Under the pieces are notes generated by a model that did no database searches, had not been told where the DNA came from, and saw only the letters and a program-made list of their open reading frames with translations. This document shows positions 10,888 to 57,685 of a DNA stretch of 64,000 bases, piece by piece. Position numbers and translations under genes: made by a program. Where the stretch lies: positions 225,881 to 289,880 of IMG/VR virus record IMGVR_UViG_3300026521_000003. One strand, given 5' to 3'. The first letter of the stretch is position 1, and each line of letters opens with the position of its first letter.

Positions 10888-11205
10888 ATGAAAAGAAAAT
10901 GTGATATTTGTAATACTGATTATTATGTTAAAAAATCTGATTTAGCTAGAGGATGGGGATTAACATGTAGTAAATCTTGTGCAGCTAAAAAAAGAGAAAG
11001 ATCTAGGAATAACTATGATGAAACAACAGTTAAAATCAATAACCTTAAAAGAAAATTATGGTTTAACAAATATAGAAGTATTGAATTAGAACTCAGAAAG
11101 AAAAATAAAAATATGACCGATATTGAAATTTGGGTTGAAATGTATAAGATTACAAATGATGAGATATTTTTATTTGATGAAATAAAAGATATTTTCATTT
11201 TTTAA
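10888..11205 (+). CDS. Zinc-binding protein with C-terminal DIFIF tag
   Basis: CDIC...RGWGLTCSKSCA; ends LFDEIKDIFIF*. Confidence 0.8.
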   Translation: MKRKCDICNTDYYVKKSDLARGWGLTCSKSCAAKKRERSRNNYDETTVKINNLKRKLWFNKYRSIELELRKKNKNMTDIEIWVEMYKITNDEIFLFDEIKDIFIF

Positions 11206-11211
11206 AGGATA

Positions 11212-11793
11212 TTGATGCATATAATATTAACAGATCATGTAAAAAATAGAAGAAAGAAAGGTAAGATCCCACCGCAAAGATTAATAGACTTTGCAACATA
11301 TCTTATAAAAGAACACGATTTAAAAAATAAAGAAGATGGCCGATATAAGTTCCGTAGGAAATCAACATCAGCGATTATTTCTAAGAAAAAAGAAAAATTC
11401 ACATTTATCACCTTTTTTGGTGGTACAGGATGGTTGATTGATTCTGATGATTTTTCCGGATTTAATTGCAAAAAACAAACGGCTGAACGAGTTAAACTTT
11501 CCATAAAAAGAAGTAAAGAGAAGAATAAAAATAAAATTATAAAAGAGATTAAACCATTACAAAACCTTAATGCTGAAATAAAAGATAAACTGAAAAGAGA
11601 CACTTTCAAAATTGATAAGTTGCGGGGCACTACAAAAGTAATTCTTAAAGCTATGTTTGGTAATAATCCTGAATTTTTATTTTTATCTAAATTCAAATCA
11701 TACAATTTAGTTTCAATTTTAAGAAGAGATGGTGGAATTATAAAAACGATTCACAAAAATAAACTTATAGAAATAGGAGTACTAGATGGATAG
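11212..11793 (+). CDS. Basic hypothetical protein
   Basis: 193 aa Lys/Arg-rich; AAGGA SD; start TTG 11212 or ATG 11215. Confidence 0.75.
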   Translation: MMHIILTDHVKNRRKKGKIPPQRLIDFATYLIKEHDLKNKEDGRYKFRRKSTSAIISKKKEKFTFITFFGGTGWLIDSDDFSGFNCKKQTAERVKLSIKRSKEKNKNKIIKEIKPLQNLNAEIKDKLKRDTFKIDKLRGTTKVILKAMFGNNPEFLFLSKFKSYNLVSILRRDGGIIKTIHKNKLIEIGVLDG

Positions 11794-12295
11794 TAATGGT
11801 TTTATAAAGATGATAGGTAAAATGCAAAATATGTGGCAACCTACATATATAGATGAAGAATATGTCAAGGTTTATAAAGATATTTGGTTTGTTGATTCTA
11901 GTTATCCTTTTGAAATAACCAGAGATTATGAAATGGTTTTAAAAAATGAAGATGAAATTTTATCTCAAATTGGTTTATTACCAAATGCTCAAAAAATGGT
12001 ACAAATGATGATGAATTCAACGTACGGTAGTTACGGAGTACCATCGTCAAGATTATATGGAAACCCTTCTCATTATTATGCTCGAACGATGTCTACCAAT
12101 AATTTTTTTAAAGAGTACAAATATGAAGAAGCAGCTAAAGTAGCACAAAATGAAAAATTGATTGCTCACTATAATCATAAAATTAAAAAAGCACCAAAGA
12201 AGAAAGAACAAGTTGAACGTCTTACAAAAATTATTGAAATGCTCGAACAAGAAAACGAAGATTTTATCACAGAATATCCAGAAAGGTTTATTTAA
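11786..12295 (+). CDS. Hypothetical protein with C-terminal PExxx tag
   Basis: Ends EYPERFI*; internal QKMVQMMMNSTYGSYG. Confidence 0.8.
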   Translation: MDSNGFIKMIGKMQNMWQPTYIDEEYVKVYKDIWFVDSSYPFEITRDYEMVLKNEDEILSQIGLLPNAQKMVQMMMNSTYGSYGVPSSRLYGNPSHYYARTMSTNNFFKEYKYEEAAKVAQNEKLIAHYNHKIKKAPKKKEQVERLTKIIEMLEQENEDFITEYPERFI

Positions 12296-12762
12296 TGAAT
12301 ACATCAACAAATCATGTACATACGATTAATACGATACCACTTTATCAAGCCCAACATCATCTAACACAAAAACACCAAAGTACTGGAAGAATCAAGCGTT
12401 CTTTTAATCTTGGTTCCTCTTTCCAAACCGGATATAAATATCGGGTATTAACACGATTTCCATTTAGTGTTTCTAGACATGAGGAACTTGATGAAGTAAC
12501 AGTTTTTGATTTTTTTGACCGTATTACTTATCATCTTTGTGAAACGAGATTGGAAGCTGAAAAAATAAGATTGGAAGCTTTAGAAGAACATTATGATGAA
12601 CAATATAAAAAATATTTAGCAGATACTTCTAAATTTAAGCGCAAATCGTATAAATTTAATGGGTATGTTTCAGTTGATGGTTTAAAGGCCAAAAGGTTAC
12701 TTAATAGATACAAAACTGAATTGAATAATTTGGAAAAGGATCATCCAGAATGGCTAATTTGA
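12295..12762 (+). CDS. Hypothetical protein with C-terminal PExxx tag
   Basis: Ends DHPEWLI*; TAATG overlap. Confidence 0.8.
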   Translation: MNTSTNHVHTINTIPLYQAQHHLTQKHQSTGRIKRSFNLGSSFQTGYKYRVLTRFPFSVSRHEELDEVTVFDFFDRITYHLCETRLEAEKIRLEALEEHYDEQYKKYLADTSKFKRKSYKFNGYVSVDGLKAKRLLNRYKTELNNLEKDHPEWLI

Positions 12763-13100
12763 ATCATATCTTATTGCCGGAACACCGAGGTAGAACATGG
12801 CTTAATAAATGGTGGAAAACTACTTCTTCCATTAATGAAGAAGCGTTCGATATTATACTTGAGCGAGTTAATATTTTAATAGAACGTTTTGAAATTCCTG
12901 TACAAAATCCATCAATGCTAACCTCTATAATGGATCGAATAATTAGGAACTACAATGCTATTGTTTATGAAGAAAATGGAGAAATTATGATAGTTGATTT
13001 ATTTAATTATCAAACGGAGGATACCTATGCTTTTGGCCTTGGTAACACACCAATATTCAATAAGTATATTTTCGATAATTACCCAGAGTTATTAGTATGA
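12750..13100 (+). CDS. Hypothetical protein with C-terminal PExxx tag
   Basis: Ends NYPELLV*; ATG inside the previous tag (gaa tgg). Confidence 0.8.
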   Translation: MANLNHILLPEHRGRTWLNKWWKTTSSINEEAFDIILERVNILIERFEIPVQNPSMLTSIMDRIIRNYNAIVYEENGEIMIVDLFNYQTEDTYAFGLGNTPIFNKYIFDNYPELLV

Positions 13101-14001: not shown

Positions 14002-14823
14002 ATGATTGATTTAGATTATATTTTTGATGATGTTAAAAATAAGACAATAACAAAAAAAGAAGCGTATGAGTTAGTAAAAAATATTGGTGATAGTATGACA
14101 TTTACTACGTCTAAACATACTAGTACTGATGTGTATGTTGAAATAGCAAAAAAAATCCCTGATGATGATTTGATTGAGACTATGATAAATTCTCAAATAG
14201 AAAATTATCGTAGTAGTCAAGGGATATATAGATTGTTAGATTTAGCTTCAAAAACTTTTTTTGAAAAAAAGTGGGATGAAGCTATCAATCAACCCGGTGG
14301 TTATTATTTAAACTATTATAAGTCAAAGCATACTGATGGAGAAAAACTGTATTATTTATGGACTCATATTTTAAAGAAAAAACCGGCAGCAAAGAATTGG
14401 AAAGAAAAACTTAAACAGGGTATTTTAAGTCATCCTAATTGTCCACCAAAGATTACAAATAGACAATTAAGGAATTTAGATAATATACATATTATAGCTT
14501 TAAATAAAAATTTAGCATCTAATCCAAAGGCTCTAAAAGCTGTAGGTGATTATGCAGCAGTATTTAGACATGATGGTATATTTGAAAATCTTACAAGAAA
14601 CAAATATGTTCCTTGGGAGAAAATTTCAGAAGTTGTTGATATGAAAAATCAAGTAAAAGCCATGATGACACCTTCTGTACCTGTAACGTTTAGAAGAAAA
14701 GCTGCAATATTAGAATTTTTTAGAAGAGAAGATACTCCTGATAAAGCGAGAGAGGTAATGTATAAAATTACTGGTGATGATGAATTTTTACCTAAAGAGG
14801 TACGAGACCTCTTTATTTTTTAA
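14002..14823 (+). CDS. DIFIF-tagged helical-repeat protein
   Basis: Ends MYKITGDDEFLPKEVRDLFIF*; LSHPNCPPKI and LNKNLASNP LRV/HEAT-like segments. Confidence 0.88.
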   Translation: MIDLDYIFDDVKNKTITKKEAYELVKNIGDSMTFTTSKHTSTDVYVEIAKKIPDDDLIETMINSQIENYRSSQGIYRLLDLASKTFFEKKWDEAINQPGGYYLNYYKSKHTDGEKLYYLWTHILKKKPAAKNWKEKLKQGILSHPNCPPKITNRQLRNLDNIHIIALNKNLASNPKALKAVGDYAAVFRHDGIFENLTRNKYVPWEKISEVVDMKNQVKAMMTPSVPVTFRRKAAILEFFRREDTPDKAREVMYKITGDDEFLPKEVRDLFIF

Positions 14824-14832
14824 GGATATATT

Positions 14833-16374
14833 ATGAGAAAAAATGCAATTCAAACTAAAGAAAATATACGAGAATGGGTAAAGAATCATTTAGATTCATT
14901 CCCTTTTAAAATGAGTATTGAAGAATATGATAATTTAACGGATGGATTAAAATCATTAATTGAAAATAAATTGATTTCTATTCATAATAAGCAATACCCT
15001 AATAAAACAAAAGATTCATGGAGACATGACTATAAATTTACTAAAACAGAATTAAATAAACTTAAAATTCCAGACCCGTTTTTACCTCCAAGTAGTTTAA
15101 AACGTATTGAAAGTGGGTTGATTAAAGCTAGACAAATAGCTGAAGATAATAAACCTATTAAGTGGGTTGATATTAATGAACGTTTAAAAAAGAATTTTAA
15201 AAAATGGGTAGATGAATACGCTGAAACATTTGATGAAGACTTTCTTGGAAGATATTTTGATGATTTACCTGAAGATATAAAATTAGAATGGATTACACTA
15301 ATGGGTAAAAAGTTTGGTTTAAAAACTCCAGGAGCATTAAAAAAAGGTTTTATTTCAGCAAAAGATATGATTGACCAAGTCCAACATATGAGAATTCCTA
15401 ATAATATTCATAATGCTATATTAGATGTATTGCCGGAATCAGCATTTTTACAAACTACTAATAAATCTGATATGAAAAACTGGGATGCAAAAGAACAAGT
15501 TGCTTTTACGAAATCATTATCTCAAGAAGAATTAAAAGCAGCACGAGAAAATAGAAAAATTGATAAAAAGCGAGTAAAACTACTAGCTAAAGCTAGAACT
15601 ATTAAAAGTTTAGAATCTTATCAAGAACTTCTTTCAGATCCTCTATTTGATAGAGATATGCTTGAAACGATTATTAAACGTATGGAGCGAAAAACAGCTT
15701 TTGATAATGGTTGGGGAGATCAAAATAAAAAAGAAATTCTGAAATTGATTGTTACTCATCCTTTCTTATCATATGAAGATTTAAAAAGAATAGAAAAAGT
15801 AAAAGCCCCAAATTATTATGCAGGTTCACAAAAAGAGTATGTTTCAAAAGAATTAAATACTGCTCTAGCATCTAAAAAAGATTTACCTGAAAGTGATCTA
15901 ATGAAGATGGTAAAAAAGCAGCAATTCGATATTAAAGTAATTGCATCTAAAAGAGATTTAAAAGAAGAAAATAGAGAAATCTTGATTACATATACTATAA
16001 AGCATCACTCACATATGCCAGCTCAATTAGAAGAAGTATTTTCTAATTTAAAGATTAAAAAAGATAAGTATAAAAAGGAAATTATAGAAGCATTATATTC
16101 AAAATATATAGAGAAAAATTGGTTAGCTAACGGAATCCGATTCTTAGAGGTTGTAGATAAATATAATTGGCTGTCTGAAATTGATGAAGAATTAAAATCA
16201 AAAATAGCAAGATCATTAGTTAAGAACTATAAAGATAATAGGATTAGTCAAGATAGATTAATAAAAATGCTAAACAAAATATCTGCAGGTGCGGATTATT
16301 TAATGAAACTATATGAAGAAACTGGCGATGACGCTTTCTTACCAACTGATGTTAAAGACATTTTTATATTTTAG
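14833..16374 (+). CDS. DIFIF-tagged protein (513 aa)
   Basis: Ends LYEETGDDAFLPTDVKDIFIF*. Confidence 0.9.
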   Translation: MRKNAIQTKENIREWVKNHLDSFPFKMSIEEYDNLTDGLKSLIENKLISIHNKQYPNKTKDSWRHDYKFTKTELNKLKIPDPFLPPSSLKRIESGLIKARQIAEDNKPIKWVDINERLKKNFKKWVDEYAETFDEDFLGRYFDDLPEDIKLEWITLMGKKFGLKTPGALKKGFISAKDMIDQVQHMRIPNNIHNAILDVLPESAFLQTTNKSDMKNWDAKEQVAFTKSLSQEELKAARENRKIDKKRVKLLAKARTIKSLESYQELLSDPLFDRDMLETIIKRMERKTAFDNGWGDQNKKEILKLIVTHPFLSYEDLKRIEKVKAPNYYAGSQKEYVSKELNTALASKKDLPESDLMKMVKKQQFDIKVIASKRDLKEENREILITYTIKHHSHMPAQLEEVFSNLKIKKDKYKKEIIEALYSKYIEKNWLANGIRFLEVVDKYNWLSEIDEELKSKIARSLVKNYKDNRISQDRLIKMLNKISAGADYLMKLYEETGDDAFLPTDVKDIFIF

Positions 16375-16382
16375 GTGATATT

Positions 16383-16856
16383 GTGGAAAATGATTACAAA
16401 ATTTTATTAAATGATATTAAACAAAGTGCTAAGGGTAAAATGGTTTTTAATTCAAAAGAGATTGTGAGTCAAGAAATGTTAAGTCCTCAATTAGCAAGAA
16501 TAGCTATTGATTTAGTTACATCAAGAAGAGGAAATGAAATCTATGAACTTGCTCCAGCTGTAGCCGTAGAGATCAATGACCCAATGGTTAAAGATCATAT
16601 TTTAGATGAAATTCTTAAAAACTATTTAAATAGGCAATCGGCACCAACAGCAATTATTGAATTTCTTATTAAAAATGCTAATAAATTAGACATTGGTCTA
16701 ATGGAAAAAATTTATGATACATCGGATGAAGATTTTAAACTTTTTTTAAGAAATATAGGACAAAAGTTTAGAGAAGATTTTAATATAAAAGTATATAATG
16801 AAACTGGCGACAAATCATATTTGCCAGAAGAAGTAGCAAGTATATTTATTTTTTAA
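16383..16856 (+). CDS. DIFIF-tagged protein
   Basis: GTG start; ends VYNETGDKSYLPEEVASIFIF*. Confidence 0.85.
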   Translation: MENDYKILLNDIKQSAKGKMVFNSKEIVSQEMLSPQLARIAIDLVTSRRGNEIYELAPAVAVEINDPMVKDHILDEILKNYLNRQSAPTAIIEFLIKNANKLDIGLMEKIYDTSDEDFKLFLRNIGQKFREDFNIKVYNETGDKSYLPEEVASIFIF

Positions 16857-16866
16857 AGGATAAAAA

Positions 16867-17751
16867 ATGTTTGAAATAGATGAAATGGTATATAAATTAA
16901 GAAGTATTATTGATTATGATACAGCGATAAAATATTATAACGATGAAATAAAAATAAAGTTAAATCATGACTTTCAATATGCAGAATTATTACGCAAATA
17001 TTTAGATAAAACAACAGCTTTAAAATATTGGCAAATTGGATTTGATATAGTATCTGATATAGATTCTGAATCACTTTGGTCTGATTTTGTATATCTATTA
17101 AATTCTAAATTAGCTTCTAAAAATAAAAATATCCCTTGGTTAGCATCAATGGTAAGTAATCTATCAAAAAAAATTAAAGTTGGGCATAATCTTGAAACAT
17201 TAATTATGTTATTTATTAATGTTAATTTGTTCCGATTTTATATAAAAGAAGTTCATCCAAAGTTAGACCAAGATGATTCCTATTGGGCAATATCTTCAGC
17301 AAGTAAAAATATGAATTTAAATAATATCGATGAATTAGTTGAAATAGCAGATTATAAGCTTTTTGAACGTATTTTAAACAATGATAAGGTAATGCCTGAA
17401 AATAAATTAAGATTATTAGAGTTGTTTTTAAGAAAAACTCAATTTGGTGTTAAAAATTTTAGTAGTCTGGATTTTTTATTTTTGCTTGAAAATCATCGTC
17501 GATGGTTTAATAATGTAAATGTTATGAATTCAACAACAGCAGCATATAGAAATTTATTACCTGATGAAAGTGTTGCAAAATTATTAACTGAAATTATAAT
17601 GGATGGAGATTTTACAGATGAATCTAAATACTTATGGCTATCAAGTATGTATCAATATAAATTAAATGATACAATGGGAGTAGCATTGTATGGATTAACT
17701 CAAGATGTTAAATATCTAACAGATGAAATTAAAGATATATTTGTATTTTAA
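16867..17751 (+). CDS. DIFIF-tagged protein
   Basis: Ends LYGLTQDVKYLTDEIKDIFVF*. Confidence 0.88.
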   Translation: MFEIDEMVYKLRSIIDYDTAIKYYNDEIKIKLNHDFQYAELLRKYLDKTTALKYWQIGFDIVSDIDSESLWSDFVYLLNSKLASKNKNIPWLASMVSNLSKKIKVGHNLETLIMLFINVNLFRFYIKEVHPKLDQDDSYWAISSASKNMNLNNIDELVEIADYKLFERILNNDKVMPENKLRLLELFLRKTQFGVKNFSSLDFLFLLENHRRWFNNVNVMNSTTAAYRNLLPDESVAKLLTEIIMDGDFTDESKYLWLSSMYQYKLNDTMGVALYGLTQDVKYLTDEIKDIFVF

Positions 17752-17762
17752 GGATGTAAATT

Positions 17763-18278
17763 ATGAGATATAAAATAAGTAGTAAATTATTGTCGGATAT
17801 TGTATCTAGTTATCAAGAGAGTATGAGATTGAGTGTTGGTCCAGAAATTAAATTTGTAGATGCAGAAATTGAACATCTTACATGGGATGTACTTTTAGAA
17901 GAACCTATTTTTCTAATTAATTATTATGGCTTTGATGAAGATATTTATGATTCTGATGGGTTTTTCTTTTGTCGGGATATTATTGGTTTTTCGATGGATG
18001 ATGAAAGTGAAAATGAATTAGAACGTAGATTTGGTGTAGATAATGAAAAAGTTGAAAAACTATTTATTGAACTTTTTAAAGAATTTATATCAAATAATAG
18101 TTTACCAACTATGGACATTATAGAAGAAATTTATTATTACAATTATAATTTAATTAAGATAATGAATGATATTGAATTTTTTAATAAGTTAGAAAATGAA
18201 GAAAAAGAGTACCTTTATAAAGTTACGAATGATACTTTATTTTTACCAAAAGACGTAACTGATATATTTGTATTTTAA
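17763..18278 (+). CDS. DIFIF-tagged acidic protein
   Basis: Ends LYKVTNDTLFLPKDVTDIFVF*. Confidence 0.85.
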   Translation: MRYKISSKLLSDIVSSYQESMRLSVGPEIKFVDAEIEHLTWDVLLEEPIFLINYYGFDEDIYDSDGFFFCRDIIGFSMDDESENELERRFGVDNEKVEKLFIELFKEFISNNSLPTMDIIEEIYYYNYNLIKIMNDIEFFNKLENEEKEYLYKVTNDTLFLPKDVTDIFVF

Positions 18279-18292
18279 TAAGAGGCTTAAAA

Positions 18293-19108
18293 ATGACTAG
18301 AAGAAAACCAAGAAGTTTGCGAGGTAGAGTAGCAAAGAGAGGATTTAGAGAATTATCATATGATGATAAATTAGATTATATAAATAATTCACATCAAGCA
18401 GTAAGTGAATTTAGATCATATCCTGAAGATTTTTATAATTTTCTTGATAAGATTGATTGGCATAATGTAGATTTTTGTAAAGCTTTACGGAGACCAAAGG
18501 AATTAAAACTTCTTTTAGATCAAAAACTTTTAGACCAAAAGGCTATCGATATAATATTTTTAAATACTCATTTCTTCCCTATCTTTAAAAATCTAATTAA
18601 ATTAACTAGTGAATCTAATAGTGTTATTACTAAACGTATGCTGGAATTTTTAAAGCGAGATTTTGAAAGTCAAGAACCAAAGCATAAGTTATTTAAAAAA
18701 TTAGATAAAGAGGGAATAATAGATTGGGATGTTTTGAATATGCATAGTTATTTCCAAAGTTATATGAGTTATATTTTTGGAAACTATGAGTCTTATACAG
18801 ATTTCGCCAATTATTTGCTAGATTCGGATAAAATTAGTTTAAATGGTGAAACTGAACGTAGTATTTGGCATACGTTTGATATTGATTTAATGATTAAATT
18901 ATTAAAAAAAGATAGAAAAATAGCAACTACCCCAAATGTCTTTTTAGATAATGGGAATATTGATGAATTTTTTGATAAATGGCCTAAAGATAAAGTACAG
19001 GAATTTATAAAACTAGTTAATGATAGACCGGAACTTCAAAACTGTATTATTGAAAATGCATACATATCATTATTACCAGAAGAAGTAGCAAATATATTTG
19101 TTTTTTAA
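18293..19108 (+). CDS. DIFIF-tagged protein
   Basis: Ends ISLLPEEVANIFVF*. Confidence 0.88.
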   Translation: MTRRKPRSLRGRVAKRGFRELSYDDKLDYINNSHQAVSEFRSYPEDFYNFLDKIDWHNVDFCKALRRPKELKLLLDQKLLDQKAIDIIFLNTHFFPIFKNLIKLTSESNSVITKRMLEFLKRDFESQEPKHKLFKKLDKEGIIDWDVLNMHSYFQSYMSYIFGNYESYTDFANYLLDSDKISLNGETERSIWHTFDIDLMIKLLKKDRKIATTPNVFLDNGNIDEFFDKWPKDKVQEFIKLVNDRPELQNCIIENAYISLLPEEVANIFVF

Positions 19109-19118
19109 AGGATAAAAA

Positions 19119-19757
19119 ATGTTTAAATGGGATAATTCAAAAGATTATGATGCAAATGTATTTGATTATATAGTCTATTCTGATCCAGAGAAATTGGTAC
19201 AAACTTTTTATAAAGATTTATCTCTAAGAGTTGAGTTTGAAACATCGGATCCAAATAGACATATGCCAATGGTTATTAGTACTAATTCAATAATTGAAAC
19301 TTTATTGCAAGAATTTCATGATGTTTTCACAGAACAAGAATTAATAAAGATGGTTAAATTATTATTTAAATTAGATTATGAAGATAAGTATTTTATTATC
19401 CGTACTTTAAATAGAAATTTTTTGCATAATGAACTAACTATTGATAATTATATGCTTTGTCGTATTATTGAAAAAGTAACACCTAGTAAAAATATATTTA
19501 CATCTGATATTGTTGATTTGATGCATAGGAGTAAGCAATTTATTATACCTTATTTAACAGCATTTAAATATCGATTGTCCAATCATGATAAACATTTTCT
19601 TTATACTGAATTTACTGAAGATTTTTCTGGTATGTTTGATAAAAAAATAACATACTGGATTATGGATAATATTGATGGTATTAGTAAAATGGTTATAGAT
19701 TCTGGAGAAGAACTCATTTATATACCAAAAGAAGTTAGAGAAATTTTTATTTTTTAA
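19119..19757 (+). CDS. DIFIF-tagged protein
   Basis: Ends LIYIPKEVREIFIF*. Confidence 0.85.
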   Translation: MFKWDNSKDYDANVFDYIVYSDPEKLVQTFYKDLSLRVEFETSDPNRHMPMVISTNSIIETLLQEFHDVFTEQELIKMVKLLFKLDYEDKYFIIRTLNRNFLHNELTIDNYMLCRIIEKVTPSKNIFTSDIVDLMHRSKQFIIPYLTAFKYRLSNHDKHFLYTEFTEDFSGMFDKKITYWIMDNIDGISKMVIDSGEELIYIPKEVREIFIF

Positions 19758-19805
19758 GAGAAATTAAGGATATATTTAATATAATTAAAAATAAGAGGAA
19801 TTAAA

Positions 19806-20513
19806 ATGAGAACGGAAATAGAAATACTTGCAGAAATTGAATCAGGTAAGATTACAATAACTGATGCATTAGAAGAAGTTCATGAAACCGGTGCATACTT
19901 ACTAATACAAAAAATTGCTAATATGGAATTGACTAAATCCGAAAGATTATTATTAATATCTCTTATACCACAAGTAGATGATGTCTTGAGTCTTAAAAAT
20001 TTCTTTTTAACTTTAAAAAGTCATGATGAAATAAAATTATTTTTAGAAGAATGTAATAAATCAAATATTAGTACAAGTATATATTATGCTCTTATGATAC
20101 GGAATGATATAGATAAAAAAATCTACTTTCGTCCTATAATTGATGCCCTTGCGGGAAGAAGCCAAGAATTTGTGGGGTTGATAAAGAAACTGATAAAAAA
20201 AATAGATAATATTTTATTATCTGATATTGAATATCTTTATAAAAATGCTGCAAGAAGGGATTTTGCTAATATTATCAACGAACATATATCAATTTTTTCA
20301 GAGGATATCATCAAGTACATTTTTGGAATTGTAAAGGATATGGAAGATAAAAATCCTCCAGTTTCAAGACTATTACTTCATGCTTTAGATGTTCAAATTA
20401 TGGACAATCCAAGAAAATATAGTTTTGAAGATGAATTTAAAATGTATATGTATGAATTTACTGGAAATGATGAATACTTGCCAGACGATATAAAAACGAT
20501 TTTTATATATTAA
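19806..20513 (+). CDS. DIFIF-tagged protein
   Basis: Ends MYEFTGNDEYLPDDIKTIFIY*. Confidence 0.85.
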   Translation: MRTEIEILAEIESGKITITDALEEVHETGAYLLIQKIANMELTKSERLLLISLIPQVDDVLSLKNFFLTLKSHDEIKLFLEECNKSNISTSIYYALMIRNDIDKKIYFRPIIDALAGRSQEFVGLIKKLIKKIDNILLSDIEYLYKNAARRDFANIINEHISIFSEDIIKYIFGIVKDMEDKNPPVSRLLLHALDVQIMDNPRKYSFEDEFKMYMYEFTGNDEYLPDDIKTIFIY

Positions 20514-20523
20514 AGGGGGTTTA

Positions 20524-21195
20524 GTGTTATCTAATAATAAAATTAAATTTTATAATGAAAACATACGTAAACCCCTAGAACTTCTTGGTTTTAACTCTAT
20601 TCCAAGAGGTGAAACTTACAATGAATTTTCTAAAGGTCGTAATTATAAATATAATGCGTTGATGCATATTTCTGTTCAAGTAGATTTTGAAAAATTATTA
20701 TTTAAATATCGTCTTAGCTTTCCGTGGTATAGTAATTTTTCAACTATTCCAATTGCATATAAAATACTACTTTTACCTAAAAGAGAAATAGTTGTAGAAT
20801 TATCAAAAGAGAATTATCAACAAGAATTAGAAAATATTTTTTCCGAAATTGTGGACCAATTAGAAAAAAATAAAAAAGAATTTGATATTATGATTCGAGA
20901 AAAATTAAATGAAGTAGATGAAAATAGTATAGCTAAATTATTTACACCTATCAATACACCAATACTACTAAATTATTTAGATTTAGAATATACAGATTAT
21001 ATCAAAATTATTTTTAGTTTAAGAAAAAGATTAAAGAATTATACTGAAAAAATAACTATTCTTTTTATGCATAACATGTCTAAAAAGGGATTGAGACTTT
21101 CAACTTCTGATTTAGAATTATTAGAAACTATTGAGTATAATAGTTCTATAAAATTTTCTCAACTTGAGGAACTTAAATCTATTTTTATATATTAA
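20524..21195 (+). CDS. DIFIF-tagged protein
   Basis: GTG start; ends QLEELKSIFIY*. Confidence 0.85.
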   Translation: MLSNNKIKFYNENIRKPLELLGFNSIPRGETYNEFSKGRNYKYNALMHISVQVDFEKLLFKYRLSFPWYSNFSTIPIAYKILLLPKREIVVELSKENYQQELENIFSEIVDQLEKNKKEFDIMIREKLNEVDENSIAKLFTPINTPILLNYLDLEYTDYIKIIFSLRKRLKNYTEKITILFMHNMSKKGLRLSTSDLELLETIEYNSSIKFSQLEELKSIFIY

Positions 21196-21204
21196 AGGTA
21201 CATT

Positions 21205-22713
21205 ATGATACTAAAATCAATGAAAGTTTATGATAAAAAATGTTTATTAGAAAATGATCAGTTAGAATCCAGTATTGTAGATAAACTGGCTAATGATAGA
21301 TCAATCACTATTCGATATTGGGCTGTTTCTCATAAAAATATTAGTAGTCAGAGTTTATCTAGAGCATTGTTATCAAAAAAGAATTTTGATAGAGAACAGA
21401 TTTTATCTTCAATTTTATATAATAAAAAATTAGATTTTGAAACAAGATTAACATTCGTAGAAAAATATCTTCATAATATTGAAGTAGTACTAGATTTTTA
21501 TGATATAGTTTATAATACCTCTTTAGAGGAACGAAATCAAATAATAGAAATCTTTGTTAATCGATTATTATTAAAGCAGACTTTAAAATATGAATATTTT
21601 AAATATATTCCAAGTTATATAAATTTAGCGTTAGATGAATATTCTAAGATTTATGAAATATTTTTAAAGCGTGCACCATCAATTTTGTTAGTTACGCAAA
21701 ATGGTTTTGAAAGGGACAATCAAACATTTTCTAAAACTCAAATTAAGCAAATTTTTAAAGCTGTCGTGGATAATAATAAAAATTATGGATGTTTAGTATA
21801 TGATTTAGGACCTACATATTTAAAATCAATCCCATCACATTTTTTAAATTATGTGATAAAGACAAAAAATATAACAAAAAAAGAAATTGAACTTTTTTTA
21901 ATGAATGAAAATTTTAACGAAAAAATGATAATGAAAATCATTAATACTGTTGATTATGATGTACTACTAGAAATTGCTAGATCATCTATTTTAACAGAAG
22001 ATATTGAACAACGGATTTATAATAAAATAAAAACTCATGATATTGACAGTACTTTGTTCTATGCATTATTATCGAATCCAACTCATAATTTTGAAAGGTC
22101 ATATGATTTTATGGTAATGCATCATACTTATTTTACGATATCTTCAATTATGAAGTCTATTATAAGTTCAAATTACCCTGTTACATTAATTGATAAAGTC
22201 ATTAATGAAATCAAAATAGTGCATCCTTTAACAGCACTAGGTTTATATATAGTAGAAAATAATACATCAGAAATATATTTAAATAAAATTTGGGATAAGT
22301 ATTGGGATGGTCAAATCATTAGTTATACACCCAGATATAGAGCTTATAATAGGTTTGATAATAGTATAAAAGATACTTCATATATTATTCAGTTGATGAT
22401 TACAGAATCATCACTAAGTTATAAATTTGCGTATAAATATTATAAAGAGACTAATGAAGTTAGATATTGTAGGAATATATCGGAGTATAATTCTGATGAA
22501 ATAGATAGTATATGGTCAAGTGTTAGAGACACTAATATTTTTGAATATTCTAAGAGTTATTATAATGATGCATATTATATTGAAGATGTAAAAGTTGCGT
22601 TATTAGAATATGCAAAAGAGAATAATTTATCAAAATATATAGTTGATGAATATCAGATGTTTAATAATACAAAATATATTGCTAAGGAAGCATTAGACTT
22701 ATTTGAATTTTAG
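21205..22713 (+). CDS. DIFIF-tagged LRV/HEAT-like repeat protein (502 aa)
   Basis: LANDRSITIRYWAVSHKNIS repeat-like start; ends NTKYIAKEALDLFEF*. Confidence 0.88.
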   Translation: MILKSMKVYDKKCLLENDQLESSIVDKLANDRSITIRYWAVSHKNISSQSLSRALLSKKNFDREQILSSILYNKKLDFETRLTFVEKYLHNIEVVLDFYDIVYNTSLEERNQIIEIFVNRLLLKQTLKYEYFKYIPSYINLALDEYSKIYEIFLKRAPSILLVTQNGFERDNQTFSKTQIKQIFKAVVDNNKNYGCLVYDLGPTYLKSIPSHFLNYVIKTKNITKKEIELFLMNENFNEKMIMKIINTVDYDVLLEIARSSILTEDIEQRIYNKIKTHDIDSTLFYALLSNPTHNFERSYDFMVMHHTYFTISSIMKSIISSNYPVTLIDKVINEIKIVHPLTALGLYIVENNTSEIYLNKIWDKYWDGQIISYTPRYRAYNRFDNSIKDTSYIIQLMITESSLSYKFAYKYYKETNEVRYCRNISEYNSDEIDSIWSSVRDTNIFEYSKSYYNDAYYIEDVKVALLEYAKENNLSKYIVDEYQMFNNTKYIAKEALDLFEF

Positions 22714-23119: not shown

Positions 23120-23311
23120 ATGAAAATAAAAGATTTAAATGAAATGTTTTTAAGTGGTAATCTAGACGCTGCTCTGGATTGGGATGAAACTCCTTCAGAT
23201 GTTAAGGATATGGATGGTAATCCAAGTAAATTACCTATTCAAATACCTAAAAAATTTAAAGTAAAATATAAGAAAAAACGAAACAAAAAAAATGACACAA
23301 AAGCAGTATGA
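23120..23311 (+). CDS. Small protein with leader MKIKDLNE
   Basis: 63 aa; CTS-like N-terminus, basic C-terminus. Confidence 0.7.
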   Translation: MKIKDLNEMFLSGNLDAALDWDETPSDVKDMDGNPSKLPIQIPKKFKVKYKKKRNKKNDTKAV

Positions 23312-23960: not shown

Positions 23961-23969
23961 GAATTAATT

Positions 23970-45220: not shown

Positions 45221-45234
45221 GAAGGAAAGTTTAA

Positions 45235-47156: not shown

Positions 47157-47164
47157 GAGATTTC

Positions 47165-47920
47165 ATGAGTTTAGTTAATGGCGTTATAACAAATGATTTA
47201 GAAGAAGTTAAAAAATCATTAAAACGTAATAAAAAAAGCTTAAAAGTTATTAGTAAAAGACACCAAAAAACACCATTAGAGTTAGCTGTTGTAAATGATA
47301 ATGTAGAAATAGTAAAATATATGCTTGATTTTTCAAAAGAAAAAAAGTTTGATTATTATATGAAAAGTAATTATGCAAAATCAACACTTAAGCCCTTAAT
47401 GGATTTAACAAAAAGTGTTGAAATGTCTAATTTATTAATAGAATATGGTTTTGAATTAGAAGATGAATTTTCATCATATTTAGATGCTAAAGCATCTAAT
47501 CCTTTACTAGAAAATAGATTTGAACTATTTAAGTGGGGTGTCGATCATGGAGCTGATGTAAATAAAATAATTAATGATTGGCCTCCACTATATGCTACAA
47601 TACTATCCCATAATATACCCAATCAAGAAAAAGATCAGTATATTGAATTATTAGTAAATAATGGTGCCGATATTTATTATGAGTGGAAAGAAACTAATAT
47701 ATTTTTATTACTTTTAAGATATTCATGGGATAAAGAATTAGTTAAAACGATACTTAAATATTTTGATACATTAGATTATAGAACTATTGAAATGTTATAT
47801 AGAACTGATAAAGAATTATTAAGAGGGTATAAAAATATCTCTAAGATTGTAGATATTTTAGTGGATAACAATATGATGGATGTTCTGCCACAAGATGTGA
47901 CAGAAATTTTTGTTTTTTAA
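47165..47920 (+). CDS. DIFIF-tagged ankyrin-repeat protein
   Basis: KTPLELAVVNDNVEIVKYML, GVDHGADVN, WPPLYATI, LVNNGADI; ends MDVLPQDVTEIFVF*. Confidence 0.88.
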   Translation: MSLVNGVITNDLEEVKKSLKRNKKSLKVISKRHQKTPLELAVVNDNVEIVKYMLDFSKEKKFDYYMKSNYAKSTLKPLMDLTKSVEMSNLLIEYGFELEDEFSSYLDAKASNPLLENRFELFKWGVDHGADVNKIINDWPPLYATILSHNIPNQEKDQYIELLVNNGADIYYEWKETNIFLLLLRYSWDKELVKTILKYFDTLDYRTIEMLYRTDKELLRGYKNISKIVDILVDNNMMDVLPQDVTEIFVF

Positions 47921-55208: not shown

Positions 55209-55769
55209 ATGACATCATTTAAAGATTATTATCATGATCCTTTTAGTATCCCTAGTACGGAAGATAAAAAATTTATTATTGGTCCTATAAAGCCAATGTA
55301 TGCATTACTAATAGATTCAATGGGATATAATAATATTGATGTTGATGAACTGTATGACCCTACTAATTTTAAAAAAGAGTACGAACAAGCTAAAAAAAAT
55401 CTTGAAGTGTATATGAAAGATTTGCTTATTAAATCTCAATTAATGGGTTTTTCAAAAAATGCACTTACAATAATTGTTGCCCAAAATAATGATTCTGTGT
55501 ATGTATTGAAAGGTGAGTTTGTATTACGGGTGATAAATGACTTTAAACTGAATAAAATTAAATTAGCTGATAAAACTTTTAAAGAATTTAAAGACTTTGT
55601 AGAAAATAATACAGATTACTGGTCTAATTCATTAATTGAAATAGATAAAATAACTATTAATATTGGAAATTCGCTTGAGGATTATCTGTTTTTAATGGAT
55701 CGATATGAGATTTATGATGAAACATTTAAGGAACGTTTAAAAACTGCACAGGATATTTTTATATTTTAG
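55209..55769 (+). CDS. DIFIF-tagged protein
   Basis: Ends ERLKTAQDIFIF*. Confidence 0.85.
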   Translation: MTSFKDYYHDPFSIPSTEDKKFIIGPIKPMYALLIDSMGYNNIDVDELYDPTNFKKEYEQAKKNLEVYMKDLLIKSQLMGFSKNALTIIVAQNNDSVYVLKGEFVLRVINDFKLNKIKLADKTFKEFKDFVENNTDYWSNSLIEIDKITINIGNSLEDYLFLMDRYEIYDETFKERLKTAQDIFIF

Positions 55770-55777
55770 GAGATAAA

Positions 55778-55987
55778 ATGAATGAATTGAAAGAGATTAT
55801 ACGAGTTCAAAAAGAGATAGAACGATTGGATGAAACCCGAAAAAAGCTTATTGATTATGCTATAAAAAATAAAGAGAAAGAGCTTATGAAACTATCACAA
55901 AAGAATAAACAATTAGAAGAAGAGAATAGACGACTTAAATCTGATATAGCAAATCTAAATCAAAAAATTAAAAATTTAACACACTAA
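55778..55987 (+). CDS. Small coiled-coil protein
   Basis: 69 aa; AGGAG SD; heptad pattern. Confidence 0.75.
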   Translation: MNELKEIIRVQKEIERLDETRKKLIDYAIKNKEKELMKLSQKNKQLEEENRRLKSDIANLNQKIKNLTH

Positions 55988-56003
55988 TAAATGAGAGGGA
56001 ATT

Positions 56004-56681
56004 ATGAGCGGCTGGTTTGATTCTTATAATAATAAAATTGATAGAACAATCGATAATGACAATATTTCATATACTAGTACTTCATTTGAAACTAAAGGAG
56101 AATATACTACTAGTACCACTATTAAAATGCCCACCGTAGAAGTGTTTTTAAAAGCATTAGATGCTTCTAATAAAAAGCTTACAATTCCTCTTAAACAAAT
56201 TATTGATGACTTAACAACACAAGAATTAAATTCTGTTATAGGGCTTTCATCATACAATGCTACAACTCCATTGGGTCATGCAATCAATGCTATGAATGTA
56301 GAAGCTGTTGAGTATTTATTATCATTGTGTGTTGACACTAACTTACATGGACCTAACCAAAAACATATATTGCAAGAATTATTAAATTCAAATGCAACAG
56401 AAAAAAGAATAAGAATTTTAGAAAAGGTTCTTAAAGAGTTTTCTGGCTTTATACCATTAGAACCAAATTATGATGGTCGTTTTTATAGTACGAAGTATTT
56501 AATTGTATTAATCAATAATCGTGCAGTTATGAGAGATACCATTTTTAATATTTATGATAGTTTTCCTCCAAAGCAACGGAAGGAATTAGTTAAGAATTGT
56601 AAAGCGATGCAAGAAATAGCTATAGAGAAAAAAGATTTTGAAATTCTTCCAGATGAAGTAAAGAATATTTTTCTTTTTTAG
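56004..56681 (+). CDS. DIFIF-tagged ankyrin-like protein
   Basis: TTPLGHAINAMNVEAVEYLLSLCVDTN; ends FEILPDEVKNIFLF*. Confidence 0.85.
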   Translation: MSGWFDSYNNKIDRTIDNDNISYTSTSFETKGEYTTSTTIKMPTVEVFLKALDASNKKLTIPLKQIIDDLTTQELNSVIGLSSYNATTPLGHAINAMNVEAVEYLLSLCVDTNLHGPNQKHILQELLNSNATEKRIRILEKVLKEFSGFIPLEPNYDGRFYSTKYLIVLINNRAVMRDTIFNIYDSFPPKQRKELVKNCKAMQEIAIEKKDFEILPDEVKNIFLF

Positions 56682-57685
56682 AATATAAAAATTTCTCTAA
56701 CTTCAGGAAGTAATTTTAAAACATCTTCATAATATTCCCAATCAGTTTCTTTGGTTAAGACCTCTTTAAATTTATCACTTTTTTCCATTAGTGCAATAAC
56801 TAGATCTTCCCACATACCTAAACCTCGATTATCAACTCTTTTGACTAAGCCTTTAGCTAGTTCTTCCCATTCGTTATCGATAAATGTTATATTATCTAAA
56901 AATATATCTTTTTTATCTGGGAAAAACGATGCCAATTCTCCTATTAAAGAGTCACCGGTTGTATCTTCAGAGAATCCTATATATCTAACTAATTTTTTTA
57001 TGATTTTATCATTATTTTCAGCTATAATCCAAACCGGCGGAATTGTTTGGTGTTCGGCTATGTTTGAAGGCCTTATAATTGCATACTTCATATAAAGATC
57101 CAATATTTCTTCATTAATAATTTTTTCATCTAAATTATCATATAATATCTTTTGTACAATTCTTCCTTTGAATCCTCCGTCTTCAAAAGTATTCCAAGGA
57201 TAATTGTCTGCTCCATATTTTTTTATAAGCCATTCCATTGCGGGTATATTTCTAAACTTTCCAAATTCTTCAAAAATTTTAATATGGTCAAAATTTTCTA
57301 ATTTCCCTTCTTTATCCAGTTGAGTTAATTTACCTACCGTAAATGGACTTGAAAAAGATATTTCATTTAAGTCTTCGTCAATTGCCCACTCTTTAAGTTC
57401 ATCACTAAAATGCTCAGGTTTCACTTTTTTTAATTTTGCTGCTGAAATGGCATATCTTCCTGTTGGAGTTGATGAAATAGATTGTCCAGAATTACGAATC
57501 GCATCTATAATCATTTCGCTAGTTTTATTAAATAATTCTTTTCGAGCAATAGATTTATAATTATTTCCTTGGTCAAAAAACGATATAGCACTTTGTTTGA
57601 TACCAATCCCATCTTCTCTTAATTTTTCCAACCATTTCATAATATTCTTTCTTGCACTTAATGAGAGATTTAATGATAAAGCCAT
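56678..57685 (-). CDS. DIFIF-tagged protein (minus strand)
   Basis: Ends LKLLPEVREIFIF*; late promoter AATAAATA at 57705-57712 and AAGGA SD. Confidence 0.88.
   Translation of the reverse strand: MALSLNLSLSARKNIMKWLEKLREDGIGIKQSAISFFDQGNNYKSIARKELFNKTSEMIIDAIRNSGQSISSTPTGRYAISAAKLKKVKPEHFSDELKEWAIDEDLNEISFSSPFTVGKLTQLDKEGKLENFDHIKIFEEFGKFRNIPAMEWLIKKYGADNYPWNTFEDGGFKGRIVQKILYDNLDEKIINEEILDLYMKYAIIRPSNIAEHQTIPPVWIIAENNDKIIKKLVRYIGFSEDTTGDSLIGELASFFPDKKDIFLDNITFIDNEWEELAKGLVKRVDNRGLGMWEDLVIALMEKSDKFKEVLTKETDWEYYEDVLKLLPEVREIFIF

What the first reader, a model, noticed from the sequence alone, without database searches (positions are those of the whole stretch)
10888..57685. 42 unrelated proteins share one C-terminal 'LPxEVKDIFIF' tag: candidate new phage docking/addressing system
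Seen: 42 ORFs (38 in 14002-47920, plus 10888, 55209, 56004 and minus-strand 56678) of 101-513 aa, with largely dissimilar bodies, all end in [ILVM]-F-x-[FY]-stop. Phe is invariant at -3 and the terminal residue is Phe in 40 and Tyr in 2. Most have Glu/Asp at -8, Pro at -10 or -9, and often an upstream (Y)ExTGD cap. Codons and stop codons vary synonymously (TAA, TAG and TGA all used), so selection acts on the peptide, and it must be the free C-terminus. Inference: about half of the window encodes clients or adaptors of one shared receptor. Candidates are a virion-loading or ejection signal, an F-box-like docking peptide linking variable binding domains to one phage or host machine (protease, chaperone, scaffold), or a degron. 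I know of no described phage family with this architecture, but I cannot search.
Basis: partly seen in the sequence, partly recalled or inferred. Interest (0 to 1): 0.95.

Follow-up and report, generated by a model that had tools for sequence, protein, structure and literature searches.

The report
Shared C-terminal tag on phage proteins
Half of this 64-kb stretch of an uncultured giant phage encodes 42 otherwise dissimilar proteins that all end in the same short peptide, which looks like an address or docking tag for one still-unknown partner.

Summary
42 ORFs (101-513 aa) end in [ILVM]-F-x-[FY]-stop, where 0.10 are expected by chance (P about 6e-99).

- **Selection is on the peptide.** Synonymous codons in the tail follow body usage.
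- **Bodies are dissimilar.** Without the tail, no BLASTP pair reaches E<1e-3 and no hhalign pair exceeds 54%. Bodies include ankyrin repeats (4-6 members), a zinc ribbon and an all-alpha fold.
- **The genes are real.** Omega is 0.17 against a syntenic relative.
- **The family is rare and phage-restricted.** About 141 distinct members sit in a few AT-rich jumbo-phage contigs of the T4 superfamily, usually in arrays. None was found in 185,579 cellular genomes.
- **The core is strictly terminal.** It is terminal 120 times and internal 4 times.
- **The tail outlasts the body.** Distant orthologs keep 58% identity in the tail and 31% in the body.
- **One lineage shifted its consensus in many paralogs at once.** It moved from EVKDIFIF to EAKD[LM]FLF, through different codons.
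- **AF2 leaves the last residues unpacked** in two unrelated bodies.

This supports a trans-acting docking or addressing peptide for one shared partner (about 0.8). The partner is unidentified. I favour prohead loading, a C-terminal counterpart of the T4 capsid-targeting sequence (about 0.35), over a hub or adaptor role. F-box/PRANC membership was tested and not met. A second C-terminal tag family ([YF]PExΦ[IV]) was also found.

The parts
10888..11205 (+). Isolated tail gene, 105 aa: zinc-ribbon module plus tail
   Evidence: Tail found. Residues 4-41 match five PHROG families, including an HNH-endonuclease family; in three of them the match lies at or near the end of the profile, where no tail is modelled.
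14002..22713 (+). Array block 1: 10 consecutive tail genes starting at 14002, 14833, 16383, 16867, 17763, 18293, 19119, 19806, 20524, 21205
   Evidence: Spacers of 8-14 nt carry a Shine-Dalgarno sequence. No Pfam family. TATAAATA lies 45 nt upstream of 14002.
23292..28192 (+). Array block 2: 6 tail genes starting at 23292, 23970, 24546, 25601, 26398, 27233
   Evidence: 23970 is a weak ankyrin match. From 25601 onwards there are orthologs in L012.
28839..31882 (+). Array block 3: 4 tail genes starting at 28839, 29303, 30797, 31439
   Evidence: 28839 passes the Pfam ankyrin thresholds, and the tail follows directly after the last repeat. Its L012 ortholog is only 47% identical, with omega 0.73.
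32921..39639 (+). Array block 4: 10 tail genes starting at 32921, 33937, 34528, 35523, 36183, 36811, 37394, 38195, 38509, 39010
   Evidence: 37394 was modelled by AF2 as an all-alpha protein, pLDDT 85, with the terminal residues at about 49. 38509 is ankyrin and 34528 a weak ankyrin match. Orthologs occur in L012, L016, L019 and L020.
41254..47920 (+). Array block 5: 8 tail genes starting at 41254, 41992, 42834, 43749, 44465, 45235, 46563, 47165
   Evidence: 43749 and 47165 are ankyrin. The AF2 model of 43749 matches ankyrin folds by Foldseek. TATAAATA upstream of 41254 is conserved in L012 and L016. 43749 has no partner in L012.
55209..55769 (+). Isolated tail gene, 186 aa, next to a primase/helicase-like gene
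   Evidence: It has no similarity to T4 gp55, which is of equal length.
56004..56681 (+). Isolated tail gene, 225 aa
   Evidence: It converges on the next gene and overlaps it by 4 nt.
56678..57685 (-). Isolated tail gene on the minus strand, 335 aa; its tail has a one-residue deletion (LP-EV)
   Evidence: Its ortholog in L014 is 35% identical in the body and 83% in the last 12 residues.

Best explanation
The last 11 residues, [FY]-L-P-x-E-V-K-D-I-F-I-F-COOH, are often preceded by a Y-x-x-T-x-D cap. I read them as a trans-acting docking or addressing peptide. It sits on a large, diversified set of soluble, mostly acidic proteins that look mainly alpha-helical, from an uncultured clade of AT-rich jumbo phages of the T4 superfamily.

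**Shown**
- The peptide is selected as a peptide.
- It must be at the free C-terminus.
- It is the slowest-evolving part of each protein over long distances.
- It changes in concert across paralogs within a lineage.
- AF2 predicts a short N-capped helix followed by an unpacked Φ-F-Φ-F end.

**Inferred**
- All members plug this end into one hydrophobic pocket of a single partner (about 0.8).

**Committed guess for the partner (about 0.35)**
- The partner is the interior of the prohead (scaffold, core or capsid inner surface). The tag would then be a C-terminal counterpart of the T4 capsid-targeting sequence.
- It would load a payload of some 40 different binder or inhibitor proteins, delivered with the DNA to act on host proteins such as defence systems at the first moment of infection.
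- Helical-repeat bodies would suit passage through the tail, because they unfold and refold easily. This last point is an inference.
For: **Peptide-level selection and terminal position**
-. The core is terminal 120 times and non-terminal 4 times in 407 distinct ORFs.

**Real genes with individually constrained, mutually dissimilar bodies**
- Omega is 0.17 at dS 0.5 in 24 ortholog pairs.
- No BLASTP pair among bodies reaches E<1e-3. No hhalign pair exceeds 54%.
- 126 proteins fall into 56 body clusters that are orthologous groups.
- Different body types: ankyrin, zinc ribbon, a 16-helix all-alpha protein.

**The tail outlasts the body**
- 58% against 31% identity in 24 distant ortholog pairs.

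**Concerted shift**
- Ile at -4 is 30/42 in the window and 29/30 in L016+L019, but 1/19 in L020 (Fisher 1e-6).
- Leu at -2 is 4/42 against 14/19. Ala at -7 is 4/42 against 13/19.
- The codons at -4 in L020 are ATG, TTG, TTA, GTA, CTA and ATA, so these are independent substitutions and not gene conversion.
- Body ILMV composition is nearly unchanged.

**Exposed terminus**
- pLDDT is about 49-51 for the last residues after helices at 85-95, in two unrelated bodies.

**The tail is dispensable for the fold**
- Distant orthologs P0046 (8-residue extension) and P0047 (degenerate tail) keep the body.

**For the capsid reading specifically**
- Jumbo-phage heads carry about 50 proteins and more than 40 MDa of ejection proteins (PMC7411985).
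- The array abuts the large terminase gene.
- TATAAATA, the T4 late-promoter consensus as I recall it, lies 33-45 nt upstream of three sub-operons and is conserved in L012 and L016.
- The gene just upstream of the array has a weak phiKZ internal-head-protein match (E 1.7e-4, below the cut-off).
- Members have no signal peptides or membrane segments.
Against: - No partner has been identified, and no virion data exist.
- The T4 targeting sequence and the jumbo-phage propeptides are N-terminal and are cut off at a Glu. Here Glu at -8 is present in only 62% of window tails and in 47% or fewer in L016 and L020, where S/T/A replace it. An obligatory Glu-specific processing site is therefore unlikely.
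- A strictly terminal position is more typical of carboxylate-reading pockets (PDZ-like domains, ClpX, clamp or SSB-tip pockets) than of known capsid-targeting peptides.
- The neighbourhood upstream is an accessory, counter-defence region (Apyc1, Tpt1, CYTH). Three short gaps inside the array carry TATAAT-type elements. Both features fit early, intracellular action equally well.
- TATAAATA is not significantly enriched overall (3 intergenic of 16, with 1.4 expected) and is absent from L020.
- Single tail genes also sit inside replication modules (L018, L027).
Confidence: 0.35

Rival explanations
1. Hub-and-adaptor system acting inside the infected cell. The variable bodies bind different host targets, and the common tail plugs each of them into one phage or host machine such as a protease, unfoldase or chaperone. 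This would be a bacterial-virus analogue of F-box or poxvirus ANK/PRANC substrate receptors, or of SspB-type adaptors.
For: - All the evidence for one shared partner applies.
- Ankyrin bodies are joined to a short C-terminal motif beginning L-P-x-E, as in F-box helix 1 (the F-box consensus is from memory).
- The top structural neighbour of the ankyrin member is an enzyme-inhibiting ankyrin immunity protein.
- The neighbourhood is accessory and counter-defence.
- TATAAT-type elements lie inside the array.
- The strictly terminal position suits carboxylate-reading pockets.
Against: - No F-box or PRANC signal appears in any member or tail.
- Bacteria have no SCF ligase (established knowledge).
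- No candidate hub is encoded in the window or the fetched loci. The non-tail genes inside the array are no better conserved than the tail genes.
Confidence: 0.25
2. The tail is a sliding-clamp-binding motif of the T4 type. The 42 proteins would be tethered to the phage clamp (the 'toolbelt'), as T4 gp43, gp55 and gp33 are through their interchangeable hydrophobic-acidic C-termini.
For: - The phage belongs to the T4 superfamily: T4-type terminase, and UvsX, RNase H and family-B polymerase in relatives.
- PMC2988020 describes the precedent.
- The real T4 tails (gp43 and gp55, read) share the pattern of an acidic residue followed by alternating aromatic and aliphatic residues.
- Single tail genes sit in replication modules.
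Against: - The motif differs from SLDFL[FY]. The T4 motif is not strictly terminal.
- More than 40 competitors for three clamp sites would interfere with replication (inference).
- No tail-bearing protein resembles gp55 or gp43.
- I could not reach the clade's own polymerase, gp55 or gp45.
Confidence: 0.07
3. The tail is a C-terminal degron that gives all members a short, timed half-life through a host or phage protease such as ClpXP or Lon.
For: - The position is strictly terminal, the end is very hydrophobic, and the terminus is predicted to be exposed.
- A concerted shift could follow a change of protease or host.
Against: - Known C-terminal degrons need only 2-5 residues. Here P(-10), L(-11), E(-8), K(-6) and D(-5) are also conserved.
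- Maintaining about 32 kb of genes under purifying selection only to destroy the products is costly (inference).
Confidence: 0.08
4. An ordinary, very old paralog family of helical-repeat proteins. The last repeat and cap happen to be the best conserved part for intramolecular folding reasons, and there is no shared partner.
For: - The genes lie in a tandem array.
- About half share the upstream YxxTxD cap, and some pairs align over 50-140 C-terminal residues.
- In the ankyrin subgroup the tail follows the last repeat.
- Both modelled bodies are all-alpha.
Against: - A lineage-wide parallel change at three tail positions in bodies that share no detectable similarity is not expected for independent intramolecular caps.
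- The terminal residues are the least confident part of both models.
- The tail is attached to a zinc ribbon that occurs without it in other phages.
- Distant orthologs keep the body with a decayed or extended tail.
- Strict terminal placement of two invariant Phe is unusual for a helix cap.
Confidence: 0.1
5. The signal is read by something other than a protein pocket for folded proteins. Either it is a nascent-chain or termination-context signal read by the ribosome, or it is a C-terminal secretion signal for a host export system.
For: - The conserved length of 12-20 residues would fit the ribosomal exit tunnel, and the genes are tightly coupled in operons.
- Ankyrin 'eukaryote-like' bodies and a Gram-negative host hint fit effector secretion.
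Against: - The tail is present whatever lies downstream: the last genes of blocks, a convergent pair, and genes followed by 300-nt gaps.
- All three stop codons are used.
- Known C-terminal secretion signals are loose in sequence, not an 11-residue motif (from memory).
- These appear to be lytic T4-like phages.
Confidence: 0.04

Closest known systems
T4 capsid-targeting sequence (CTS) on the internal proteins IPI-III and Alt
   Same: - In T4-family phages, otherwise highly diverse, fast-evolving, often counter-defence proteins share only one short terminal peptide. That peptide addresses them to one place, the prohead core (PMC3012670, PMC7411985).
- The genes lie in plastic regions.
   Different: - The CTS is N-terminal, 10-20 residues long, and is removed by the prohead protease after a Glu.
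- The tag here is strictly C-terminal, has no sequence similarity to the CTS, and has no obligatory Glu.
- The scale differs: 42 genes here against 4 in T4.
T4-type sliding-clamp-binding C-termini of gp43, gp55 and gp33
   Same: - Unrelated proteins of one phage carry an interchangeable short hydrophobic-acidic C-terminal peptide on a flexible link. It docks into one hydrophobic patch of a hub (PMC2988020).
- The chemical character is similar.
   Different: - The motif is different: SLDFL[FY] against KDIFIF.
- The T4 motif tolerates 1-4 residues after it.
- There are three clients in T4 against dozens here.
- No tail-bearing protein here is a replication or transcription factor as far as can be detected.
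F-box proteins and poxvirus ANK/PRANC proteins
   Same: - These are large virus or host families in which variable binding domains (ankyrin, LRR) are joined to one conserved adaptor motif beginning L-P-x-E.
- In poxviruses the motif is at the C-terminus and the genes lie in arrays.
   Different: - There is no profile match.
- The tag is 11-20 residues with one short helix, not a three-helix domain.
- The hydrophobic spacing is different.
- The partner of F-box and PRANC domains, Skp1, does not exist in bacteria.
Encapsulin cargo-loading peptides and microcompartment encapsulation peptides
   Same: Short C-terminal peptides on unrelated cargo enzymes dock into a pocket on the inner face of a protein shell. 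For encapsulins the shell has the same HK97 fold as phage capsids (from memory).
   Different: - The consensus is different.
- Those peptides are not strictly terminal.
- They belong to cellular compartments, not virions.
- Nothing here was tested against them.

Membership tests
F-box / PRANC | Sequence match to the F-box, F-box-like or PRANC profiles | tested here: not met
   Pfam on all 42 full-length proteins at E<=0.01 and on the 32-residue tails at E<=10 returned neither family.
F-box / PRANC | A domain of about 40-50 residues forming three helices | tested here: not met
   Conservation spans 11-20 residues. AF2 shows one helix of 4-6 residues followed by coil.
F-box / PRANC | Binds Skp1 of an SCF ubiquitin ligase | not testable with these tools
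   Shine-Dalgarno-led genes indicate a bacterial host. Bacteria lack SCF ligases (established knowledge).
T4 capsid-targeting sequence | One short conserved peptide on otherwise diverse proteins | tested here: met
T4 capsid-targeting sequence | N-terminal position | tested here: not met
   The tag is at the exact C-terminus.
T4 capsid-targeting sequence | Bounded by a prohead-protease site with Glu at P1 and removed on maturation | tested here: inconclusive
   L-P-x-E precedes the hydrophobic end, but Glu at -8 is 26/42 in the window, 9/19 in L016 and 8/19 in L020. Cleavage itself cannot be tested here.
T4 capsid-targeting sequence | The proteins are present in the prohead or virion | not testable with these tools
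   No isolate or proteome is available. The only pointers are context (adjacent terminase) and TATAAATA motifs.
T4-type clamp-binding C-terminus | [quoted passage not shown] | tested here: met
   description in PMC2988020.
T4-type clamp-binding C-terminus | Motif S-L-D-F-L-[FY] | tested here: not met
   The T4 gp43 and gp55 ends, read from NC_000866, differ from the tail consensus.
T4-type clamp-binding C-terminus | Carried by the phage's own polymerase, gp55 and gp33 | not tested
   These genes are not in the window or in any tail-bearing locus I could reach.
Ankyrin-repeat proteins (bodies of a subgroup) | Match to ankyrin profiles above the curated threshold, and an ankyrin fold | tested here: met
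   28839, 38509, 43749 and 47165 pass. 23970 and 34528 are weak. The AF2 model of 43749 matches ankyrin structures. The other 36 members show no ankyrin signal.
C-terminal degron (ssrA-like) | Non-polar residues at a free C-terminus that are sufficient for proteolysis | not testable with these tools
   The form is compatible. Turnover cannot be measured here.

The most novel reading that the evidence does not exclude
These phages run a programmable 'plug-in' system. Dozens of fast-turning-over binder proteins (ankyrin, helical repeat, zinc ribbon) each recognise a different host target. All use one 11-residue C-terminal plug to engage a single phage or host machine. A second, different plug ([YF]PExΦ[IV]) on more than 20 small proteins addresses another site. 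This would be a previously undescribed addressing code in bacterial viruses, functionally parallel to the F-box/PRANC families of eukaryotes and their viruses, or to cargo loading of protein shells.
Probability: 0.3. Interest if true: 0.9.

Novelty: new variant of a known kind. Interest (0 to 1): 0.8.

Why it matters
- **Scale.** A short, transferable C-terminal tag shared by about 40 proteins per genome would be the largest addressing or docking family described in a bacteriophage.
- **A route to the unknown machine.** The tag gives direct experimental handles: peptide pull-down, complex prediction, and the lineage-specific consensus shift as a built-in co-variation test.
- **If the tag loads the capsid.** It would reveal a large co-injected payload of candidate host-takeover and counter-defence proteins. 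It could also serve as a tool for packaging foreign proteins into phage heads.
- **If the tag recruits a hub.** It would be a bacterial-virus parallel to F-box-type substrate receptors.
- **Dark matter.** Either way it assigns a common logic to about 32 kb of otherwise unannotatable genes, and a second tag family may extend that logic.

Tried and rejected
**Explanations rejected**
- **Chance.** P = 6e-99.
- **A DNA-level repeat or recombination signal.** Synonymous codons vary as in the bodies.
- **Gene conversion as the cause of the concerted shift.** Six different codons encode four residues at -4 in L020.
- **Compositional drift.** Body ILMV fractions are nearly equal, while Ile at -4 falls from 71% to 5%.
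- **Secretion or membrane anchoring.** No signal peptides were seen by eye in the N-termini, and only one weak hydrophobic segment was found.
- **An obligatory Glu-specific protease site.** Glu at -8 is not conserved in relatives.
- **An embedded conserved partner gene within the array.** The non-tail genes there are no better conserved than the tail genes.

**Tests that were negative or not confirmed**
- F-box/PRANC membership.
- Similarity of the tail to any solved structure.
- My by-eye reading of P0030 as a leucine-rich-repeat protein. Pfam did not confirm it, and I do not rely on it.

**Searches that led nowhere**
- Megablast and tblastn of seven proteins or regions against 50,697 phage records found no hits for the tail genes.
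- Host identification through the TnpB failed, and there are no tRNAs.
- The generic promoter scan found 161 sites where 155 were expected.
- The hunt for the clade's polymerase and clamp found only the N-terminal polymerase part, in a relative.
- The fold search of the first AF2 model failed because the job and then the model were lost remotely.
- Six single pattern hits in other viral contigs, plus L048 and L049, were chance.

Full report
**1. What is in the window**

The window is 26.8% G+C. It is the last 64 kb of a 289,880-bp viral contig, IMGVR_UViG_3300026521_000003, which is the same record as Ga0256828_1000001.

The genes are tightly packed on the plus strand. A Shine-Dalgarno sequence and a start codon follow 5-12 nt after each stop, so the host is a bacterium.

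Recognisable genes are phage-like:
- a T4-type large terminase split by a homing endonuclease;
- a primase/helicase-like protein, a DEDDh exonuclease, RNase HII, and an inserted TnpB.

The nearest cultured phages are only distant relatives. The UvsX-like protein of a relative is at most 33% identical to those of Rak2-like jumbo phages. Nothing in 50,697 phage records resembles the tail genes.

**2.

The right-anchored profile is Y(-20)-x-x-T-x-D-x-x-[FY]-L-P-x-E-V-K-D-I-F-I-F. Phe is invariant at -3, position -1 has 40 Phe and 2 Tyr, and there is little information beyond -20.

The four-residue pattern occurs internally 24 times in 19,069 windows. That predicts 0.10 terminal cases among 82 proteins, and 42 are seen (P = 6e-99).

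Synonymous codon choice inside the tail equals that of the bodies, and all three stop codons occur. Selection is therefore on the peptide, not on the DNA.

**3. The bodies**

With the last 30 residues removed, no pair reaches E<1e-3 by BLASTP. Full-length pairs match almost only through the last 20-70 residues. Single-sequence profile-profile comparison of all 861 pairs gives one pair at 53% probability and the rest below 17%.

Pfam recognises ankyrin repeats in six members, four of them above the curated thresholds, and essentially nothing else.

Three body types are documented:
- **Ankyrin.** The AF2 model of 43749 (pLDDT 72.5) matches ankyrin structures, including an enzyme-inhibiting ankyrin immunity protein.
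- **All-alpha.** AF2 models 37394 as a 16-helix protein (pLDDT 85).
- **Zinc ribbon.** 10888 is a zinc-ribbon module known from five PHROG families, in three of which it aligns at or near the end of the profile without any tail, plus the tail.

The family is soluble and mostly acidic (median pI 5.4), without membrane segments.

The bodies are therefore heterogeneous. About half share the upstream cap, and there is an ankyrin subgroup in which the tail follows the last repeat. Deep common ancestry of many helical members cannot be excluded.

**4. Relatives**

A profile of the 32 C-terminal residues was searched against 1.84 billion representative proteins. It found 31 hits at E<=0.001, and 29 of them end exactly at the protein's C-terminus. 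Most are new proteins.

Tracing them gives further AT-rich phage contigs with tandem arrays:

| Locus | Source contig | Tail genes |
|---|---|---|
| L012 and sister loci | syntenic 110-kb contig | 39 |
| L016 | 23-kb contig | 19 |
| L019 | 10.6-kb contig | 11 |
| L020 | 151-kb contig | 19 in 21 kb |
| L014 | 6.5-kb contig | 3 |
| L018, L027 | replication modules | single genes |
| L050 | 306-kb phage | at least 1 |

In all, 141 distinct tail-bearing ORFs were seen. A strict DNA pattern found none in 185,579 cellular genomes and only these phage contigs in metagenomes.

Pooled proteins fall into 56 body clusters. These are orthologous groups in conserved order, and paralogs do not cluster together. 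The array is therefore old, and each member is individually maintained.

**5. Evolutionary signals**

Against the close relative L012, the 24 ortholog pairs have omega 0.17 at dS 0.5, in bodies and tails alike. These are functional genes. Two pairs evolve much faster (omega 0.73 and 0.40), and one gene is present in only one of the two genomes.

Against distant relatives, bodies are 31% identical and the last 12 residues 58%.

The five-residue core is terminal 120 times and non-terminal 4 times in 407 distinct ORFs.

The most telling result is a concerted shift:

| Tail position | Residue | Window | L016 + L019 | L020 |
|---|---|---|---|---|
| -4 | Ile | 30/42 | 29/30 | 1/19 |
| -2 | Leu | 4/42 | 12/30 | 14/19 |
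| -7 | Ala | 4/42 | 10/30 | 13/19 |

- The window against L020 gives Fisher P between 1e-6 and 6e-6 at each position.
- The L020 codons at -4 are ATG, TTG, TTA, GTA, CTA and ATA.
- In 13 of 14 ortholog pairs the L020 residue at -4 is not Ile. Nine of these changed from Ile in the window, three differ between two non-Ile residues, and one is Leu in both.
- These are parallel independent substitutions, not gene conversion.
- Body composition hardly differs between the genomes.

Many dissimilar proteins changing the same three tail positions together is what co-evolution with one common binding site predicts. Independent intramolecular caps would not predict it.

**6. Structure of the tail**

In both AF2 models, L-P-x-E starts a short helix: residues 254-259 of 262 in one, and 225-228 of 233 in the other. 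The final three to five residues are coil with pLDDT of about 50, after helices at 85-95. No coordinates were available, so contacts could not be inspected.

Distant orthologs of 37394 keep the body while the tail is either extended by eight residues or degenerate. The tail is therefore not needed for the fold.

**7. What it most likely is**

I am fairly confident (about 0.8) that the tail is a trans-acting docking or addressing peptide read at the free C-terminus by one partner. The partner is not identified.

*Prohead loading.* I rank this first (about 0.35), for these reasons:
- T4-type phages already use a short shared peptide to load very diverse internal counter-defence proteins (PMC3012670, PMC7411985).
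- Jumbo heads carry dozens of proteins (PMC7411985).
- The array abuts the terminase gene.
- TATAAATA motifs lie upstream of three sub-operons and are conserved in two relatives.
- Across biology, shared terminal tags on many unrelated proteins are most often localisation signals (general knowledge).

The points against are the opposite terminus, the lack of an obligatory Glu, the accessory and counter-defence neighbourhood, and internal TATAAT-type elements.

*Intracellular hub or adaptor.* This is nearly as likely (about 0.25).

*Sliding clamp.* This is a concrete candidate hub, given the T4 precedent (PMC2988020). However, the real T4 tails have a different motif and are not strictly terminal, and I could not reach this clade's polymerase, gp55 or clamp.

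*Other readings.* A degron, an ordinary paralog cap, and ribosomal or secretion readings are less likely, for the reasons given under the rivals.

**8. Comparison with what is known**

F-box/PRANC membership was tested and not met (tail length). The tail matches no Pfam family and no solved structure. Literature searches for the motif and for the architecture found nothing.

In working principle it resembles four known systems: the T4 capsid-targeting sequence, the T4 clamp-binding tails, PRANC-type adaptors, and cargo-loading peptides of protein shells. It belongs to none of them. I therefore class it as a new variant of a known kind, a terminal addressing or docking tag, at a scale not previously described for a phage.

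**9. A second tag**

At least 14 further small ORFs in the window end in [YFH]-P-E-x-[WFL]-[ILV]-stop. Ten match a strict pattern for which 0.009 terminal matches are expected, and only one pair of bodies is related. More occur upstream in a near-identical phage and in other relatives. This suggests that C-terminal tagging is a general habit of this phage clade.

**10. Limits**

- There is no isolate, no host, no expression data and no virion data.
- Only two structure models were made, both from shallow alignments.
- Most of the genome outside the window could not be read.
- Promoter inferences rest on short motifs in very AT-rich DNA.

Noticed in passing
window 2785-6978, 11786-13933, 60200-60670 (14 ORFs); also L042 1-10000, L044, L018, L050: A second C-terminal tag family. 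Small proteins (63-197 aa) with mostly dissimilar bodies end in [YFH]-P-E-x-[WFL]-[ILV]-stop. Ten match the strict pattern in the window, where 0.009 are expected. The tag recurs in related phages.
   Followed up: partly
window 49314-54290: The large terminase gene is split. The N-terminal part is at 49314-49922, followed by a 711-aa HNH/DUF7487 homing endonuclease at 49958-52093 and an unassigned 435-aa ORF at 52138-53445. The C-terminal part is at 53505-54290.
   Followed up: partly
window 39640-41253: A TnpB (IS605 OrfB-type, 396 aa, minus strand, 39911-41101) is inserted inside the array. The syntenic relative L012 lacks it. No close relative was found in 185,579 cellular genomes.
   Followed up: partly
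window 28206-28814: A membrane protein of the Gly_transporter family (PF03458, E 9e-36) is embedded in the array. It is conserved in L012 (67% identity). It looks like an auxiliary gene of cellular origin.
   Followed up: no
window 32186-32910: Two small non-tail genes lie inside the array and are conserved in L012, L016 and L020. The second ends in a very acidic stretch with a terminal Trp. They have their own upstream TATAAATA.
   Followed up: partly
window 19758-19805, 27199-27232, 34480-34527: The three medium-sized gaps in the array share the arrangement AAATTAA[AG]-N11-12-TATAAT. These may be internal promoters.
   Followed up: partly
window 56004-57685: Two tail genes converge and overlap by 4 nt at their stop codons, so each tail's coding DNA is followed by the reverse complement of the other's.
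   Followed up: no
L016 8382-8585, L017 62-265, L020 14073-14267: HicA-toxin-like ORFs of 64-67 aa sit directly upstream of tail genes in three relatives, in front of different orthologs. There is none in the window.
   Followed up: no
L042 1429-2319 and neighbours (10 kb upstream of the window in a near-identical phage): This is an accessory and counter-defence neighbourhood: Anti-Pycsar Apyc1, a Tpt1-type RNA 2'-phosphotransferase, a nucleotidyltransferase and a CYTH-domain protein.
   Followed up: no
L044 14426-16210 and 481-2730: A related phage contig from the same sample carries a TonB-dependent-receptor beta-barrel gene, which hints at a Gram-negative host. Its RecA/UvsX gene is interrupted by an intein or homing endonuclease.
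   Followed up: no
window 28839-29291 and 41254-41979 versus L012: Two tail genes diverge far faster than their neighbours: 47% and 58% identity with omega 0.73 and 0.40, against 85-92% identity and omega of about 0.1-0.2. Gene 43749 is missing from L012. These are local hot spots of change.
   Followed up: partly
L020 16296-18281: Two genes without the tail interrupt the array of the 151-kb relative. They carry Fibrinogen_C and Laminin_G_3 domains.
   Followed up: no
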